A DNA stretch of 63,745 bases, filler included, from Octopus bimaculoides (Eukaryota), in the NCBI RefSeq assembly GCF_001194135.2. It is 7 parts of 6 records of this genome, joined end to end, with 100 filler letters (N's around TTAATTAATTAA, not from the genome) between each part and the next. Parts side by side here need not be neighbours in the genome. Positions count along the whole stretch, not along the records: positions 1 to 26,482 come from NC_068997.1; 6 more parts are not named here. One strand, 5' to 3'. A program made the translations under genes and the position numbers. Below are positions 2,415 through 23,869 of the stretch, piece after piece. Every line of letters begins with the position of its first letter. Position 1 is the stretch's first letter. The notes beneath the pieces are model-generated. The model saw nothing but the letters and a program-made list of their open reading frames with translations. It was not told the DNA's origin and did no database searches.

Positions 2415-4238
2415 NNNNNNNNNNNNNNNNNNNNNNNNNNNNNNNNNNNNNNNNNNNNNNNNNNNNNNNNNNNNNNNNNNNNNNNNNNNNNNNNNNNNNN
2501 NNNNNNNNNNNNNNNNNNNNNNNNNNNNNNNNNNNNNNNNNNNNNNNNNNNNNNNNNNNNNNNNNNNNNNNNNNNNNNNNNNNNNNNNNNNNNNNNNNNN
2601 NNNNNNNNNNNNNNNNNNNNNNNNNNNNNNNNNNNNNNNNNNNNNNNNNNNNNNNNNNNNNNNNNNNNNNNNNNNNNNNNNNNNNNNNNNNNNNNNNNNN
2701 NNNNNNNNNNNNNNNATATATATAAAACATGCGTATGCATGCAACACATACATACATAAGTGTATGTATATAAATGTGTGTATACACATACACACATATA
2801 TATTCAGGCATATATATATATATATATATATATATAAACACAAATATGAGTGTGTATGTGTGTGTGTATTTATTTATATAAATGTAAATGTATAGGTTGT
2901 CCATAAATTACGTTTGCAATTTGAAAAATTCTGGAAAAAATATTTCGCATGATATTGATACTAAATATTAACTCGAAGTTGCACATATGTATGCATGTAT
3001 AAATACGTACATTCATATACATACATATATATATATATATACACACACACAAGCACATTTACTTACATACACACACACGCACGCATTCACGCACGCACGC
3101 ACACACACACACATTCACACACATATAAAGGCATTTTTATCCTTGTGTATACACTTATGCATTATAGGAATCATTCCAAGTGCAGCAAGCAAAGCAGGTT
3201 GCACCTTAAGGCTACAACTGCAATGCACTCATAGTGTCATCGTGTGAACAATGTAGCAGCTGCAGTAAAAGATGCATCATCTGTGTTCCAATAAATCTTT
3301 TATTGATTATCGAATCAATAACTCCATCATCACGAACTGCAGCATTGGTGCTTCGATCATCGTCGTCGTCATCATCATCACCATCATCACAAAGTGCAAC
3401 AGTATTATTACTTCCCTCACTCTCAAAGCCATCACTAGCAATTGCATACCCCACTACTATTACATCATTTACCCCTACTTTTTCAGCTGTCACGTTACCA
3501 CCACCCCACCATCATGTACTCTACACCTCCACGACCATCACTACTGATATTACCATTCCTTCCAATCGCAAATGATCATCGTATGAAATTAAAAGCCCAA
3601 TGGACTACATATGCAATAAGGTGGAATGGCCACGGCTTAAACCGTTATGGCTGATTTAGAGCAGCTGACCTGGGGTTAAACAACAACAATTGTATTATAA
3701 CTACCACCTAAACTACAATCATATTGGAACAAGGACCGAAACGCCATCGCAAAAATACTACCACCTCTTGAACGGACAATTGTAATTCTACGACTGCAGC
3801 CCATACTATCAATGTTTCACCATTACCTTCACTAACAACAACACTTCGCCAACTTAAAAATGAGAAGCAAGGACCACATTGGCTAATGTGGTTCTAGGTA
3901 TACAACGTCTGAAAATGCGACAGGGTTGTCATGGCTAGAATGCCTTTCATCATTGGTCTGTTTGATCAGGCCTGGTTGGGTCTATACAACAACATTTCTG
4001 AATGTAGCATTATTTAGACTAACATCTCTATCAGCACTACACTATCACCACCACAACCACCACCACCACAATCGCTACCATCATCACTACTACTACTACT
4101 ACTACTACTGCAGCCTGTACCATCATTATACTTTCCATCCAATCTGCAGCATTAAGATGAAAGCAATTAGATAATTATTGCCGAAATTACTATGGAAACA
4201 GCGATCCCTTATTTTTTCTTGAACTCCTTTCACATCAA

Positions 4239-18199: not shown

Positions 18200-19920
18200 G
18201 TCGTCATCCAATTAGAGCAGTAGAGAAAATGTTGAGAAAACACGAAAGCGATGGAACATTTTCTAAGAATCAATCCAAAGAAGCGAAGAATAGAATGCTG
18301 AACATTTGGAATGAATGGCTCCCGAAAAAAAGAACAGGGCATCGAAAGACCAATTAATGATCGACAAGATGGTTGTCAGGAATTGCAGAAAGAGACTGAC
18401 AAATTTAGGCATCGCAAGAATGGATGAAACGGGGCCAAGAACTGAAAAAGATCCCGAAAAGACGAAAGCAGAGTCGATCCTGGTGGTATTTGAACTTAGA
18501 ACATAAAATGTGACGTAACATTGGAGAGGAGAGTCAACATTTGGAGAGGAAAATTAGCAAGAATCTTTCAAGGGGCCAACCTCTCCTATCTTGTTTGCAA
18601 TCAAGCTAAATCCCTTTGTTGGTTATTTTAAAGAATATTCACTGGTAAAGGAAAGGGGAAAAGCGAGTCATCTTCTAATTATGGATGATTTAAAGTTTTA
18701 CAGCTTAAGACAAAAATCAATTGCATTCCTTTGTGCAAACCTTAAGAATATTTACTAGCGACATTGGAAAGACATTCGGAATCGAGAAATGTGCTATGAT
18801 AGGGATGAAGCGGGGGAAAATCCATAAAAAGTATTGGAATAAAGCTACCTAATGATGATAATAGGAAGAAACTCCCAATGAAGAGAAACATACATCCCCA
18901 ATCAGATGTGGACTGGTTATACTAAAAGAGAGCAGAAGGAGGAAGACGGTGAGTAAGTGTGGATGAGAGAGTAGAACTAGGGAAGACGAGTTTAAGTTTC
19001 TATTTGGAAGGAAATGGAAAACATTCTCGTTTATGAGTTGATAAATGAAGGACGACTTACAGAATTCGTAAAACCCGAAAAGAAAAAATAGAAAATGTGG
19101 AATGGAGGAAATCAGTCTTTGAATGAGAGAAGACTCAATCGGTGTTTCCGAGAAGAAATAAGAGATGAGGGAAGAGAAGAACAGCTGATTCTTGTTTTAA
19201 AAGAACTGTTGAAGAAAGGTACTGAGGAAAGGGTTTTTGGCAGCACAAAACAGGCCCTAAGGGTAAATTGAACCGAAACGATGATAAATCGATAGGACTG
19301 TTCACCTTCATATAGAATGTGCAGTTATTCAGATGAGACTGCAGCTCACATTGTGTGGGAAATCTTCTGTTACCTCAGAACTTATGCAAAAAGTGTAGGT
19401 ATGATAAGATGGTTGTAATATTTCATTATAATTTTTGTAAGAAATTTGGTTTTTCACGCACAGAAAAAAGTCATGACCGTTTTGTGGAAATAGAAATGAG
19501 AGAAAATTGTTAAATGAGGTCGTTGTGGGACTTTACTAAGCAAACCGAAAGAAGAACTGAACAAAAAAGACTGGTTATTGTAGCCGTTGATAAGAAAAGA
19601 AACTATGTATTGTAATCAATGTGGAATGCTTATTTGATACCAGATTTATAAAATAGAAGGAAAAGTAAAAGTAAAGTATTATAACAACTTGAACAGTTAA
19701 GAGCAAAGCTTGGAAAACTTGGTCTTAATCTTGAACTGGGTGCAGTATAGAGAACCACTAGGTTCGGTAAGAATTATACTTTATGTTTATAACTCAATTC
19801 CCAGTAGAAGTAGATATGGAGAGAAGAAAATATCTGGAAGGTACAAAATGCTCTTTATTCTAGACCATGAGCTGTGGTTCGATAGAAAGCATTATTAAAA
19901 CGGGTACGCCAATATCGCAA
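18200..19920 (+). mobile_element. Dong/R4-clade (restriction-like endonuclease) LINE, 5'-truncated and heavily degraded
   Basis: Fragments in order: KDQLMIDKMVVRNCRKRLTNLGIA, QG..LSP.LF, MDDLK, FGIEKCA, HPQSDVD..Y..R.EGGR, CRMC..ET, WDF...T.R..E, followed by a (GAT)n tail. Confidence 0.85.
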
Positions 19921-19930
19921 GATCATGATG

Positions 19931-19962
<32 letters not shown>

Positions 19963-20869
19963 CATCATCATCATCATCATCATGAAGAACAATAGATTCA
20001 GTTATTGTTGTCGTTATTAATATTTTTTATTTCAAACAATGTCAGATTTTGCCTAATCTTCACTGTTCACAAAGCTGGAGCATCATCCCCTAATGTGGCG
20101 AGCTTGTCACCATAAATGTACTCGGGTCTAAACCCTTTTTCTGCATGTGCTTAATAACTACACAATGCCAAATTTGGTCCATTTTCAAGAGAAGTCGCTT
20201 TTAGTTACTTTTTTGAACAGTAAGGTGTCAGTTTACCTGGAAAGAAACAATGCAGTTTTTAATAATTAATGTTGAAATAATTGCATGCAAGATTTCACAG
20301 CTCAAGAATCCCTCCGTCACAGTGAGCCTATGATCTTTTCAGTCCACCCTCGTATACGAAATCCAATGTACTCATTATGACTACCTGTCTGATAAGGTAT
20401 ACTAGGCACATGCATCACAGCCATATACGCGTGATATAGTGACCTCATATCAAGATAAACATCGCTTGACCTTTCAGTTGGGGGCCGAGTTAGAATTTTC
20501 TTCGAATCCAGTAGCCCATCCCACTCAAAAGGTTCCTGAATAAGGTTTGTTTAAGAACGATGAACGAAACACTCGTTTTCAGACGTGAGTAATTCAAACC
20601 CCAAAGTATTCCTCTCAGCACATGGCTATGATGCTCCCCAACTACTTCTACTCGTGATCAGAGATGCACATATCGTCAGCCACCAAGGGACATGCTCAAC
20701 TGGTGAAGATCAAGCAACTGACAAGCAAATCTGTGGTATTAAGCAGAATATTTGCTGTAGCCTATATTTTATACCAAGACAAAACATGTACATGAAGACA
20801 CTTCCAATCAGTTAAGAACTGAAGCCATGAGAACCACTGTTTGGTACTGCATCAGGGCATCAGCGCTAT

Positions 20870-20915
20870 CATCCTCATCATCATCATCATCATCATTATC
20901 ATTATTATCATCATC

Positions 20916-20983
<68 letters not shown>

Positions 20984-20988
20984 CATTA

Positions 20989-21061
<73 letters not shown>
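20870..21061. repeat. (ATC)n-(ATT)n microsatellite; tail and target of the adjacent Dong element
   Basis: Directly visible and abuts the element 3' UTR. Confidence 0.95.
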
Positions 21062-21063
<2 letters not shown>

Positions 21064-21973
21064 CTTTGTAACACAGTGTAGGTAAAAGTGCACCGGAGTC
21101 TTTAGTCATCTGTCAAGTCACAACAAGAACTTCAGATAGATAATACTTTCCTTAAGATGTCCACTGTGCCCAATAAGGCTGCTCTTTGCAAGACATCAAT
21201 CTTGCATGGGATTTCTAGTTGCCTTAAGAAATCTTGAAGTTTCAATGGGATTGAGTCCAACGCTCCGATCACCACTCGTATCACTTTTACATTACCCTCT
21301 CACATCTTATACATTCTTGCCATTTCCACTTTCAATTCGGAGTACTTGGTGAATTTTTCACCTCTTTACTCACAACATTCATGTCATTTGGTATGGCTAC
21401 ATCTATGATCTGACAGTATTTGTCTCTTTTATTCACTATGACAATATCCGACCGACGGTGTTCGATTAAACGATCCGTCTGAAAATCATAGTCCCAGAGT
21501 ATCGTTACTTTTCCATCCTCCTGCATAACTTTACTTGGTACACGCTCATACCAGTTCTCTGTGACTTCATATTGGTATTTACGGCATAAAAACCTATTAA
21601 GATACACACACACTATCGTGGCGGCGCTTGCAATCTTTTTGTGCAAGGCTCTCACATCCATTCACCAAGTGGGTCACATTTTCCACACTCTTTCCTCAGA
21701 GTCTGCATTTCTGGGTGTCAGAAATTTTATAGATGTTATACTTCACTGACTTGGTAGTGAGAGCTTGGTCTTGTGCAGCAATGATCAGGCTTTCGGTGGT
21801 ACGCTTCAAATCACCTCGCTCAAGCCATGCGCACGATGCTGTATTATCCTTAACGTCCTGTGTATTCCTTTCAAACTGTCCATACATTCTCATTTCAGGA
21901 AAGTCTTCTTTTCTCTTCTTCTCAGATCTTTGGTTAAACTCTTCCTTGCCCATCATTTCATCTGCATTTACAC
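21062..21973 (-). mobile_element. Dong/R4 LINE 3' segment (CCHC finger, RLE endonuclease, 3' UTR)
   Basis: MYGQF...ESLIIAAQDQAL...KCRL; WDYDFQTDRLIEHRRSDIVIV...IIDVAIP (PD..D endonuclease); VVIGAL...LQRAALLGTVDILRKVL*; then (TAA)n. Confidence 0.93.
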
Positions 21974-23129
21974 GGGAATATTGTGGGGAAACTACCGTCC
22001 CATAGCATGCCTAAATATAATCTTGAAGATACTCAATGGAATATGTGCGGCAAAGACATATATTTTCCTGGCACAGGAAGGAATATTACTGAGGGAACAA
22101 AAAGGATGTAAGAAGAGTTCTCAGGTTACCAAGGATCACTTGGTCTTGGATAAAACAATTTTGAGGCATAGTAAAAAAAAAACATCACACAAACATTTAT
22201 ATGGCTTGGATTGACTTTAAGAATGATGCCTCATTCTTGGATTGTTGAATGTCTGCAGATGTTTGATGTTGCTGACAACATCACAAATTTTCTGATGCAT
22301 AGCATAAAAGAGTGGGAAAGTAAATTGTACTCAAGTAATGTATTCCTAGGAGAAGTTAATATTAAAAGGGGCATCTCCCAAGGTGACTCGTTTTCTCTGT
22401 ACTATTTGTAATTGCACTAATACCAATAACAATGACACTTAGGAACGTTAAGGTGGGTTACCGATGTGGAAAGAAAAAATGAAGTTTTTTGCTACTTGTT
22501 GACCTGAAATTGTTTGAGAAATCTGAAAAACAAATAGATTCCTTAACCAAAACAGTCCAAAAGTGTGGTAGGGACATCGGTATGGAACTTGGGGTTACCA
22601 AATGCTCAGTATTTAATATGAGAAGAGGGAAGAAAGCAGCCTGCAGACGATTGCGGCTACCATTAGGAGAGACCATGGGGAACCCGACGGTAGTGGGTAT
22701 AGATATTTAGGGATTGTGGAGCTGGATGACATTCTACACAGAGAAATGAAAGTCAAGATCAGCGAGGCATATCAAAAAAGGATGAAGATGGTGTTGAAAT
22801 CCAGCCTGAATGCCAAAATTTGATTGCCGCAATGAATATCTGGGCAGTTGTGGTGGTCAGATATAGTGCGTCCATCCTCAAATATATTAAGGAGGAAATA
22901 TCAACACTGGATAGAAGGACGCGAAAGTTGATGACGCTGCATTGGGCCCTATACCCTAAAACAAACGTAAACAGACTGTATATGAAAAGAAAGAATGGTG
23001 GTAGAGGACTAATTAGTATAGACCATTGTATAAAGGAGCGAAAGGAGAACGCTTGCCAAGTATTTGATAAATAGTGATGAAGACCTGCTGCAATATGCCG
23101 TGAAAGATATGGGTGTTAATGCAGATGAA

Positions 23130-23131
<2 letters not shown>
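21974..23131 (+). mobile_element. Dong/R4 LINE RT segment, inverted relative to its own 3' segment
   Basis: GNYRPIACL...EQKGCKK...KDHLVLDK; MPHSWIVECL; KRGISQGDS; DLKLF; LDRRTRKLMTLHWALYPKTNVNRLYMKRKNGGRGLIS; ends LLQYAVKDMGVNADE. Confidence 0.93.

Positions 23132-23200
<69 letters not shown>
23131..23200. repeat. (TTA)n microsatellite flanking the inverted Dong segment
   Basis: Directly visible. Confidence 0.97.
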
Positions 23201-23869
23201 GTAATATAATAGAAGTGATAACCTTCTAATGAAGTTCTTTGCTACTTGTTGTTGTCGCTGTTGGTTTGTTGGTGGTGATGTTGATGACAATATTGAAAGA
23301 AATAAAAATTTCTATAAATTCGCAGTTCCAATATTGGAATTTTTCAAGCATAAAATATCATACTTCACTTAATGCTAGTTACACACGCACGAAGCATATA
23401 CACGCGCACACATAAACATATATAATTATATATTTGTGTGGGTGTGTGTGTGTATGTGTGTGTGTGTGTGTGTTAGTACATAGGTTATATATGCTCCCAA
23501 TGCTATACTATTTCTATATGTATATTAAAAATATTACTTGTGTGTGTGTGGGTGAGTGGGTGGAGTGTGTGCATAAATCGATAACATATATTCTATAGAT
23601 TATTTGTATTACATATGAAGAAAATATATTACAATACAACACCCTCCTTATAAATGATTAACACTCGACTAAATATCACATTCTCATAAATGTTAGGCCT
23701 CACAACTTTGGCTGACTTTTCTTGGCTAGCATATATGAGGGGTTTTTTTTTTTTTGTTTTTGGGAATAGCGAACAATTCATCTCTAAACTATTGCTGTTC
23801 ATTCTGTACAAAGCACAAATGCTGCTCACAACTGAGTGACTAGTTATATAGTGAAAATTTACTATTTAG

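What the first reader, a model, noticed from the sequence alone, without database searches (positions are those of the whole stretch)
21062..23131. Dong/R4 LINE with twin-priming-type 5' inversion inside a (TTA)n target
Seen: the 3' part (21973 to 21062) is on the minus strand and ends in (TAA)n. The RT part (21974 to 23131) is on the plus strand. The outer end of the inverted part, gtgttaatgcagatgaaat (23113-23131), reappears 18/19 identical at the start of the 3' part (reverse complement of 21955-21973). Flipping the RT part restores one continuous protein, ...LLQYAVKDMGVNADE-MMGKEEFNQ... Both flanks are (TTA)n in the same orientation. The element sequence at the breakpoint (gaaATGATG) resembles the target repeat (gaaATTATT). 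Established: this geometry is the signature of twin priming, documented mainly for mammalian L1, and Dong elements target TAA repeats. Inference: a restriction-like-endonuclease LINE used the second nicked (TAA)n strand to prime internally.
Basis: partly seen in the sequence, partly recalled or inferred. Interest (0 to 1): 0.78.

Follow-up and report, generated by a model that had tools for sequence, protein, structure and literature searches.

The report
Half-inverted Dong-like LINE in TAA repeat
A decayed, 5'-truncated copy of a TAA-repeat-specific retrotransposon sits in a (TTA)n microsatellite with its upstream half flipped, the layout left by "twin priming" in human L1; here it occurs in a LINE that uses a restriction-like endonuclease, but this is one old copy, not a new kind of element.

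Summary
Window 21063-21973 (minus strand) is the 3' end of a LINE: CCHC knuckle, restriction-like endonuclease (RLE), stop codon, a ~70-nt UTR, then (TAA)n. Window 21974-23131 (plus strand) is the RT region that lies directly upstream in the element. Its outer 19 nt repeat the first 19 nt of the 3' part (18/19), and it abuts (ATT)n with no tail. Flipping it restores a 662-aa read-through that aligns over 99-100% of its length with ~1,140-aa relatives.

Those relatives have RT, CCHC and RLE but no APE domain. Their closest solved structures are R2 proteins. They end in (TAA)n and sit inside (TAA)n arrays, which is Dong-like behaviour. Placement in the R4/Dong clade was not tested by phylogeny.

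Three raw Illumina reads from an independent run cross the inner junction, so a pure assembly artefact is unlikely. Assembled contigs of five runs never carry that junction, so it is not a multi-copy rearranged master.

Twin (or dual) priming at a cut (TAA)n site is the best explanation, at about 0.68. The ATGATG/ATTATT resemblance is no better than chance (7-15% of sites). The inner junction has no microhomology. Post-insertion inversion is not excluded. Interest is moderate to low.

The parts
20895..21062 (-). (TAA)n on the element's sense strand, read as (ATT)56 on +. It combines the target microsatellite with the element's 3' tail. The + strand 3'-OH here is the inferred primer for first-strand cDNA. 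An (ATC)n array (20868-20926) lies just to its left.
   Evidence: Other genomic copies also run from this 3' end into TTATTATT (loose ends at 21068).
21063..21134 (-). 3' UTR of the element, ~70 nt between the stop codon and the (TAA)n tail.
   Evidence: Relatives have 57-127 nt between the end of the ORF and the (TAA)n tail.
21135..21973 (-). Non-inverted 3' part of the ORF, roughly residues 877-1152 of relative P0002. It holds the linker, the CCHC knuckle (CRL*...H...C, second Cys now a stop) and the restriction-like endonuclease motif (RRSDIVIV...IIDVAIP...K). It is decayed by frameshifts.
   Evidence: CCHC and PD...D...K are invariant in relatives. CCHC aligns with R2 protein 9nl2.
21955..21973 (-). 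Inner copy of the 19-nt segment that occurs twice. It is the 5' end of the non-inverted part.
   Evidence: 18/19 to 23113-23131.
21973..21974 (.). Inner inversion junction. It is a blunt join with 0 nt of microhomology and no filler.
   Evidence: The canonical continuations differ on both sides (loose ends: CCATATCTTTCGCGG... behind 21973...AAAGATAGAAGAAAG before 21974). 3 raw reads of X23 span 21948-21999 unclipped.
21974..23131 (+). Inverted 5' part covering the RT domain and thumb/linker, roughly residues 492-883 of P0002. Its inner end is the 5' truncation point and its outer end is the inferred internal priming site. It is decayed by frameshifts and stops.
   Evidence: (RVT_1 E 2.9e-11).
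22477..22499 (+). A 23-nt patch that is not part of the element. It replaces 32 nt of canonical sequence at the YxDD box. 22478-22501 is 23/24 identical to flank DNA 23228-23251.
   Evidence: The canonical sequence comes from loose ends at 22476 and 22500. A 190-nt contig at single-copy depth in X1 carries the patch.
23113..23131 (+). Outer copy of the 19-nt duplicated segment, at the end of the inverted part next to the target repeat.
23132..23200 (-). (TAA)n on the element's sense strand, read as (ATT)n on +. This is the upstream half of the target microsatellite. The minus-strand 3'-OH here is the inferred second primer.

Best explanation
This is one retrotransposition event of a Dong-like LINE that ended as a 5' inversion by twin priming or its two-RNA variant, dual priming. 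The element is (TAA)n-specific and carries a restriction-like endonuclease (RLE).

Shown:
- The insert is two adjoining pieces of one element in opposite orientation, inside one (TAA)n.(TTA)n array.
- Only the minus-strand piece carries the 3' UTR and tail.
- The other piece ends on target DNA at an internal element position. That position overlaps the start of the first piece by 19 nt.

Inferred steps:
1. The endonuclease nicks the (TTA)n strand. Its 3'-OH pairs with the RNA's (UAA)n tail and primes first-strand cDNA, which becomes + strand 21063->21973.
2. The (TAA)n strand is cut before that cDNA is finished.
3. Its 3'-OH (minus strand, at 23132) is used as a second primer about 0.9 kb from the RNA's 3' end. 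At most 2 nt are paired (AU), or 4 of 6 with mismatches. It is extended toward the RNA's 5' end for 1.16 kb, giving minus strand 23131->21974, and stops about halfway along the element.
4. The first cDNA runs 19 nt past the second priming site, either by strand displacement or because a second RNA molecule was the template.
5. The two cDNA 3' ends are joined without microhomology and the gaps are filled. The join could be end joining, or an end-to-end template jump of the kind described for R2 reverse transcriptase.

The copy was dead on arrival and has since decayed.
For: - **Geometry and overlap:**
- **Collinear restoration:** 99-100% coverage against ~1,140-aa relatives. Canonical copies in the same genome cross 23116<->21969 directly.
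- **Orientation rule:** regular copies and relatives have (TAA)n on the sense strand at the 3' end and, where seen, at the 5' flank too (L005, L018, L082). Two elements in one array (L005) point the same way. The plus-strand RT piece lies in the forbidden orientation and lacks any 3' end, so it cannot be an ordinary independent insertion.
- **Junction is real and rare:** the inner junction is real DNA (3 raw reads). It is absent from assembled contigs of five runs in the four junction stretches laid, although those runs hold the multi-copy family sequences. It is therefore low or single copy.
- **No repeat at the inner junction:** a post-insertion inversion with a break inside the flanking array would have left (TAA)n there.
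- **Similar age:** private substitutions are about equally dense in the two halves among listed sites, 19 in 908 nt versus 21 in 1,155 nt.
- **Precedent:** twin and dual priming are described for L1, and lack of inner-junction microhomology is reported there too (PMC2837659, PMC4245944). R2 protein in human cells gives antisense-oriented junctions to upstream target DNA (PMC11371274).
Against: - This is one old copy, and no target-site duplication can be read in a microsatellite.
- Complementarity at the proposed second priming site is no better than chance.
- The classic twin-priming model predicts a small internal deletion. Here there is a 19-nt duplication, which needs strand displacement or a second RNA.
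- A staggered-break inversion after insertion would also give an inverted 19-nt duplication.
- The same copy carries a templated repair-like patch (22477-22499), so the locus has seen at least one other DNA-repair event.
- The outer junction and the whole 2-kb structure were not confirmed by reads. No long-read runs were available.
- 5' inversions were nearly absent for non-L1 LINEs in cell assays (PMC4245944).
Confidence: 0.68

Rival explanations
1. Post-insertion inversion. An ordinary collinear, 5'-truncated Dong-like copy was inserted. Later its upstream 1.16 kb was inverted by breakage and rejoining. One break was a 19-nt staggered cut inside the element, which after fill-in gives the inverted 19-nt duplication. 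The other break was at the element/(TAA)n boundary.
For: The staggered-break model reproduces the inverted 19-nt duplication. The blunt inner junction fits end joining. The same copy carries a 23-nt templated patch, which shows repair activity at this locus.
Against: The second break must fall exactly at the 5' end of the insert. No (TAA)n was carried to the inner junction and no element sequence was left at the outer one. Twin priming predicts this without coincidence.
Confidence: 0.15
2. Two separate insertions or fragments of the family that happen to lie head to head in one microsatellite, followed by deletions.
For: The family is very abundant in this genome, with word depth up to ~1e5 against ~40-60 for single-copy DNA. 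It targets TAA arrays, so double hits occur (L005).
Against: The plus-strand piece has no 3' UTR or tail. It lies in the orientation that regular copies never take relative to the repeat. The two pieces meet within 19 nt in a ~3.8-kb element, roughly a 1% coincidence. Private substitutions are similarly dense in both.
Confidence: 0.05
3. Assembly artefact: a chimeric join in a repeat-rich region.
For: Logan contigs never span the inner junction. The outer junction is unconfirmed. The family is highly repeated. The 3 junction-spanning reads all come from one run, are all second mates and lie the same way, so they may be PCR duplicates.
Against: Three unclipped raw reads from an independent 2026 run cover 21948-21999 at >=99% identity. 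Contigs drop rare paths next to high-copy nodes, so their silence is expected. The precise 19-nt overlap and tail-less end are not what a mis-join produces.
Confidence: 0.04
4. cDNA snap-back or another template-switch product of a single priming event. The first cDNA folds back or switches template and is copied before joining to the upstream target, as seen for R2 protein in human cells.
For: R2-mediated insertions show upstream-target junctions to antisense insert sequence (PMC11371274). RTs of this superfamily are known for template jumping (my own knowledge of the R2 literature).
Against: Snap-back copies the cDNA itself, so it would duplicate sequence already present in the 3' part. Here the inverted part is 1.14 kb of new upstream sequence, and only 19 nt are shared. 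An RNA template is required.
Confidence: 0.03

Closest known systems
Dong (Bombyx mori, GenBank L08889) and Dong-like elements (DongAg, DongBg) of the R4 lineage of RLE-bearing non-LTR retrotransposons
   Same: A single ORF of ~1,100-1,150 aa in relatives, with RT, a C-terminal CCHC knuckle and a PD-(D/E)XK-type endonuclease, and no APE domain. The 3' end is (TAA)n and insertions lie inside (TAA)n microsatellites. A mollusc member (DongBg) and a full-length octopus Dong consensus are on record (PMC3812793, PMC9115989).
   Different: No phylogeny against reference Dong or R4 sequences was possible. No HDV-like 5' ribozyme was detected by Rfam in four relatives. The window copy is 5'-truncated, decayed and half-inverted.
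L1 5' inversions by twin priming (Ostertag & Kazazian 2001) and the dual-priming variant (PMC2837659)
   Same: The sense 3' part carries the tail. The adjoining upstream part is inverted. The outer end of the inverted part is joined to target DNA at an internal element position. There is a small overlap at the breakpoint, and an inner junction that can lack microhomology.
   Different: The endonuclease is restriction-like, not APE. The primers are the two strands of a trinucleotide repeat rather than a T-rich site. No TSD can be read. There is a 19-nt duplication instead of the internal deletion drawn in the standard model. There is no significant complementarity at the second priming site.
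R2 retrotransposon (R2Bm and vertebrate R2; structures 9nl2, 9dou, 8gh6)
   Same: These are the closest solved structures (E 5.6e-30, against 1e-15 for L1 ORF2p). The CCHC motif aligns. The order of domains is the same, with RT followed by a C-terminal RLE.
   Different: R2 targets one 28S rDNA site, not a microsatellite. Regular second-strand cleavage in R2 is thought to follow first-strand synthesis. Identity to R2 is low and confined to the RT and CCHC regions.

Membership tests
Dong / R4-lineage (TAA)n-specific RLE LINE | Single ORF with a LINE-type reverse transcriptase | tested here: met
   RVT_1 in the window copy (E 2.9e-11) and in full-length relatives (E 1e-23 to 1e-28). One ~1,140-aa ORF per element in loci L002-L006.
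Dong / R4-lineage (TAA)n-specific RLE LINE | C-terminal CCHC knuckle plus restriction-like (PD-(D/E)XK) endonuclease; no N-terminal APE endonuclease | tested here: met
   C965, C968, H977, C982, P1050, D1051, D1066, K1078, E1081 and K1082 are invariant in 20 relatives. CCHC aligns to R2 protein 9nl2. No Exo_endo_phos hit at E<=0.1 in P0002, P0015 or P0012. The motifs are recognisable but mutated in the window copy.
Dong / R4-lineage (TAA)n-specific RLE LINE | 3' end in (TAA)n and insertion within (TAA)n microsatellites, sense strand = TAA strand | tested here: met
   Window. Other copies in the same genome: loose ends TTATTATT at 21068. 32 of 47 relatives' loci with a downstream simple repeat have (TAA)n 57-127 nt after the ORF. 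L005, L018 and L082 also have (TAA)n upstream. Four relatives have (TTA)n and five have poly(A), so the trait is not universal in the wider group.
Dong / R4-lineage (TAA)n-specific RLE LINE | RT phylogeny groups with Dong (L08889) and R4 (U29445) rather than R2, NeSL, HERO, CRE or Utopia | not testable with these tools
Only R2 has solved structures.
Dong / R4-lineage (TAA)n-specific RLE LINE | HDV-like self-cleaving ribozyme at the 5' end (shown for Dong and R4, PMC3774820) | tested here: inconclusive
   The window copy lacks its 5' end. Rfam at E<=0.1 found no ribozyme in L002-L005. Rfam models cover few HDV-like variants. L003-L005 share a conserved GC-rich 5' UTR block that was not analysed further.
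Twin-priming 5' inversion | 3' part in sense orientation with the tail at the target; adjoining upstream part inverted; breakpoints adjacent in element coordinates (small deletion or duplication) | tested here: met
   19-nt duplication, 18/19. Collinear restoration at 99-100% coverage. Canonical joint 23116<->21969 in other copies.
Twin-priming 5' inversion | Outer end of the inverted part joined directly to upstream target DNA, without tail or 3' UTR | tested here: met
   23131|(ATT)n in the assembly. Read support for this junction was not obtained.
Twin-priming 5' inversion | Target-site duplication flanking the whole two-part insert | not testable with these tools
   Both flanks are the same trinucleotide repeat, so any duplication is invisible.
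Twin-priming 5' inversion | Complementarity between the top-strand 3' end and the internal priming site on the RNA | tested here: inconclusive
   2 nt are contiguous (AU), or 4/6 for ATGATG versus ATTATT. 14.5% of element positions reach 4/6, and 6.6% do so with the first two matched.
Twin-priming 5' inversion | Single event: the junction exists as DNA, is locus-specific, and both halves have the same age | tested here: met
   3 raw reads span the inner junction. It is absent from contigs of five runs, so it is not multi-copy. The density of private substitutions is similar in both halves among listed sites, a rough comparison.

The most novel reading that the evidence does not exclude
A restriction-like-endonuclease LINE can undergo true twin or dual priming in vivo. 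That would mean the second strand of the (TAA)n target is cut before first-strand synthesis is complete. Its 3' end would then be used by the RT as a primer on an internal RNA site with essentially no base pairing. The two cDNAs would be joined bluntly, possibly by the end-to-end template jumping known for R2-type RTs. This would extend 5' inversion beyond L1 in mammalian cells. It would also give a genomic read-out of the timing of second-strand cleavage in RLE LINEs.
Probability: 0.55. Interest if true: 0.5.

Novelty: new member of a known kind. Interest (0 to 1): 0.4.

Why it matters
5' inversions are a hallmark of human L1. In cell assays they were almost absent for other LINEs (PMC4245944). 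The order and timing of second-strand cleavage in RLE LINEs is still debated (PMC6895275). A clean twin-priming-type copy of a Dong-like element suggests that the top-strand 3' end can be captured by the RT before first-strand synthesis ends in this group too. Because the family has thousands of copies in this genome, a census of inverted copies could turn this single case into a quantitative test. On its own, the locus is a dead transposon fragment with no expected effect on the host.

Tried and rejected
**Read evidence**
- Logan contigs of X1, X3, X5, X8 and X12 were laid on the inner junction. None spans it. This is uninformative because such contigs drop rare paths beside high-copy nodes, but it does argue against a multi-copy junction.
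- A 60-nt junction query to the run index was too short.
- The outer junction was tested with raw reads. No read entered the (ATT)n. Coverage was only ~0.7x per run, and repeat-rich reads may be filtered.
- No PacBio or Nanopore runs were listed.
- In sister organisms B and C the family is present. No contig carries this copy's private patch or junction. Depth is low, so this is inconclusive.

**Relatives and annotation**
- Rfam found no HDV-like ribozyme in four relatives.
- Source names and accessions for the relatives were sought to classify the family. None were given.
- In 86 fetched loci of relatives, none has family hits on both strands. Most are element-sized assembled contigs, so this says nothing about how often inversions occur.

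**Explanations rejected or downgraded**
- cDNA snap-back is rejected, because the inverted part is new upstream sequence and not a copy of the 3' part.
- Two independent insertions are rejected on orientation, the missing 3' end and the breakpoint coincidence.

Full report
**1. What is in the sequence**

On the plus strand, (ATT)56 (20895-21062) is followed by 911 nt (21063-21973). Read on the minus strand, these 911 nt encode the C-terminal part of a LINE protein. The protein ends ...LRKVLSI*, and is followed by ~70 nt of UTR and the repeat, which is (TAA)n in that orientation.

From 21974 to 23131 the plus strand encodes the reverse-transcriptase region (RVT_1, E 2.9e-11). At 23130 the sequence runs into (ATT)23.7 with no UTR or tail.

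The last 19 nt of this part (23113-23131) equal the reverse complement of 21955-21973 at 18 of 19 positions.

After flipping the RT part and removing one copy of the 19-mer, frame 1 reads ...LLQYAVKDMGVNADEMMGKEEFNQ.... A read-through of the decayed frames (662 aa) aligns over 99-100% of its length with proteins of 1,100-1,150 aa. The best is P0001, at 54% identity and E 9e-231.

On relative P0002, the inverted part corresponds to residues ~492-883 and the direct part to ~877-1152. The copy therefore holds about the 3' half of an element of ~3.8 kb (L005). It has several frameshifts and stops, including a stop at the second Cys of the CCHC motif.

**2. Is the flipped order the normal one, and is the junction real?**

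The family is highly repeated in the source organism (coded "organism A"). Word depth reaches ~1e5 over the 3' 900 nt and 1e2-3e4 over the RT region. Single-copy contigs have a depth of about 40-60.

Contigs and reads from other copies join 23116 to 21969, and 23099 to 21963, on opposite strands. The first is the collinear canonical order. The second skips 23 nt and comes from a single-copy-depth copy that appears to carry a small deletion.

Where the window departs from that order, the other copies continue with CCATATCTTTCGCGG... after 21973 and ...AAAGATAGAAGAAAG before 21974.

Assembled contigs of five runs never cross 21973|21974 in the junction stretches laid. Three raw Illumina reads of an independent 2026 run (X23) cover 21948-21999 completely, unclipped, at >=99% identity. 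All three are second mates lying the same way, so PCR duplicates are not excluded.

The junction therefore exists as DNA and is rare, probably unique. That argues against a mis-assembly and against a rearranged master copy.

The outer junction could not be confirmed, and no long-read runs were served.

**3. What family is it?**

Full-length relatives have one ORF with RVT_1 and a weak zf-RVT hit, and no APE domain. In an alignment of 20 relatives, the CCHC residues and a PD...D...K/E-K endonuclease motif are invariant.

The nearest solved structures are R2 retrotransposon proteins (9nl2, E 5.6e-30), well ahead of L1 ORF2p (1e-15). The CCHC region aligns with R2.

All six contigs fetched for close relatives end 70-130 nt after the stop codon in a TAA-type repeat: (TAA)4-8 in five and a shorter AATAATAATA in L004. 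Of 47 fetched loci with a simple repeat after the ORF, 32 have (TAA)n.

L005 and L018 (full length) and L082 (5'-truncated, collinear) also have (TAA)n upstream. L005 carries two related elements in the same orientation in one array. Other copies in organism A also run from the same 3' end into the repeat.

Dong elements are the known TAA-targeting members of the R4 lineage. They include a mollusc member, and a full-length Dong consensus without signs of recent activity was reported for an octopus (PMC3812793, PMC3774820, PMC9115989).

The functional definition of a Dong-like element is therefore met. An HDV-like 5' ribozyme was not found by Rfam in relatives.

**4. Mechanism**

The layout is the one expected from twin priming. 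The sense part carries the tail. The adjoining upstream part is inverted. Its outer end sits on upstream target DNA at an internal element position.

An extra argument comes from this family's orientation rule. Regular insertions have the TAA strand as sense strand, whereas the plus-strand RT piece lies the other way and has no 3' end. It therefore cannot be an ordinary insertion.

The inferred course is as follows:
1. The (TTA)n-strand nick primes on the (UAA)n tail and is extended to the position equivalent to 23113.
2. The (TAA)n strand is cut early.
3. Its 3'-OH primes ~0.9 kb from the RNA 3' end and is extended 1.16 kb.
4. The two cDNA ends are joined.

Three details deserve comment:
- **Priming-site resemblance.** 14.5% of positions in this A-rich element reach 4/6, and 6.6% do so with the first two matched.
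- **Inner junction.** It has no microhomology. This has precedent in L1 variants (PMC2837659). It would also fit an end-to-end template jump, a property of R2-type RTs; this last point rests on my own knowledge.
- **The 19-nt overlap.** It needs either strand displacement past the second priming site or two RNA templates, as in dual priming (PMC2837659).

**5. Rivals**

- **Post-insertion inversion.** A 19-nt staggered break would give the same duplication. It requires the other break to fall exactly at the insert's 5' boundary, because no repeat was carried to the inner junction. I give it 0.15.
- **Two independent fragments (0.05).** Disfavoured by orientation, the missing 3' end and the breakpoint coincidence.
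- **Assembly artefact (0.04).** Disfavoured by the reads.
- **cDNA snap-back, as seen with R2 protein in human cells (PMC11371274).** It cannot supply 1.14 kb of new upstream sequence (0.03).

**6. Novelty and interest**

Dong-like elements and twin priming are both known. My literature searches found twin priming discussed for L1 only, and as a possible relative of R2 second-strand synthesis (PMC6895275). 5' inversions were almost absent for other LINEs in cell assays (PMC4245944).

This is therefore a new instance in another LINE group. It is not a new kind of system, and it rests on one decayed copy. I rate interest at 0.4.

**7. Side observations**

A 23-nt patch inside the inverted part (22477-22499) replaces 32 nt at the YxDD box. 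The stretch 22478-22501 is 23/24 identical to flank DNA 750 nt away. An older RLE-LINE remnant lies at 18327-19612 next to a (GAT)n array. Some relatives carry (TTA)n or poly(A) tails.

Noticed in passing
window 22477-22499 and 23228-23251: A 23-nt patch inside the inverted RT part replaces 32 nt of canonical sequence (GGCCCATCATTGAACCATCTTCTGTTTATGGA) at the YxDD box. 22478-22501 is 23/24 identical, on the same strand, to unique flank DNA 750 nt downstream, with TG microhomology at its right edge. A single-copy-depth contig of run X1 carries it. It looks like a templated repair patch, or a transient template switch during cDNA synthesis.
   Followed up: partly
window 18327-19612 (+), with 19921-19990: A second, older and much more decayed RLE-LINE remnant (about 30% aa identity to P0002, covering RT through the endonuclease region) lies on the plus strand. 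About 300 nt downstream there is a (GAT)n/(ATC)n array. It may be another microsatellite-associated LINE family.
   Followed up: partly
loci L010, L026, L030, L032; L022, L039, L045, L057, L073: Among relatives of the family, four end in (TTA)n instead of (TAA)n, and five are followed within 400 nt by an A run (poly(A)-like; in L073 it lies ~270 nt beyond the ORF). Tail and target-strand preference therefore vary within the wider group.
   Followed up: partly
locus L005 2646-9435: Two related full-length elements (46% and 35% aa identity to P0002) lie head to tail in the same orientation. They are separated by (TAA)6 and ~440 nt, and (TAA)21 lies upstream of the first. This looks like repeated hits on one TAA array.
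   Followed up: partly
window 21066-23128 (read depth): There is a steep copy-number gradient in organism A. The 3' ~900 nt have word depth up to ~1e5 and the RT region 1e2-3e4, against ~40-60 for single-copy DNA. That corresponds to thousands of mostly heavily 5'-truncated copies. The family is also present in two other coded organisms (B, C).
   Followed up: partly
loci L003 (~420-600), L004 (~40-190), L005 (~2800-3000): The 5' UTRs of three relatives share a conserved GC-rich block (...CCGGGTTGGCGTCCGGCGGG...CTCATGG...GGTGTCTCGATAAAAA...). It could be a structured RNA such as an HDV-like ribozyme. Rfam gave no hit.
   Followed up: no
window 20868-20926: The left (ATT)n array is preceded by an (ATC)n array that grades into it. 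The left array (56 units) is more than twice as long as the right one (24 units), as expected if the element's own tail added repeats on that side.
   Followed up: no
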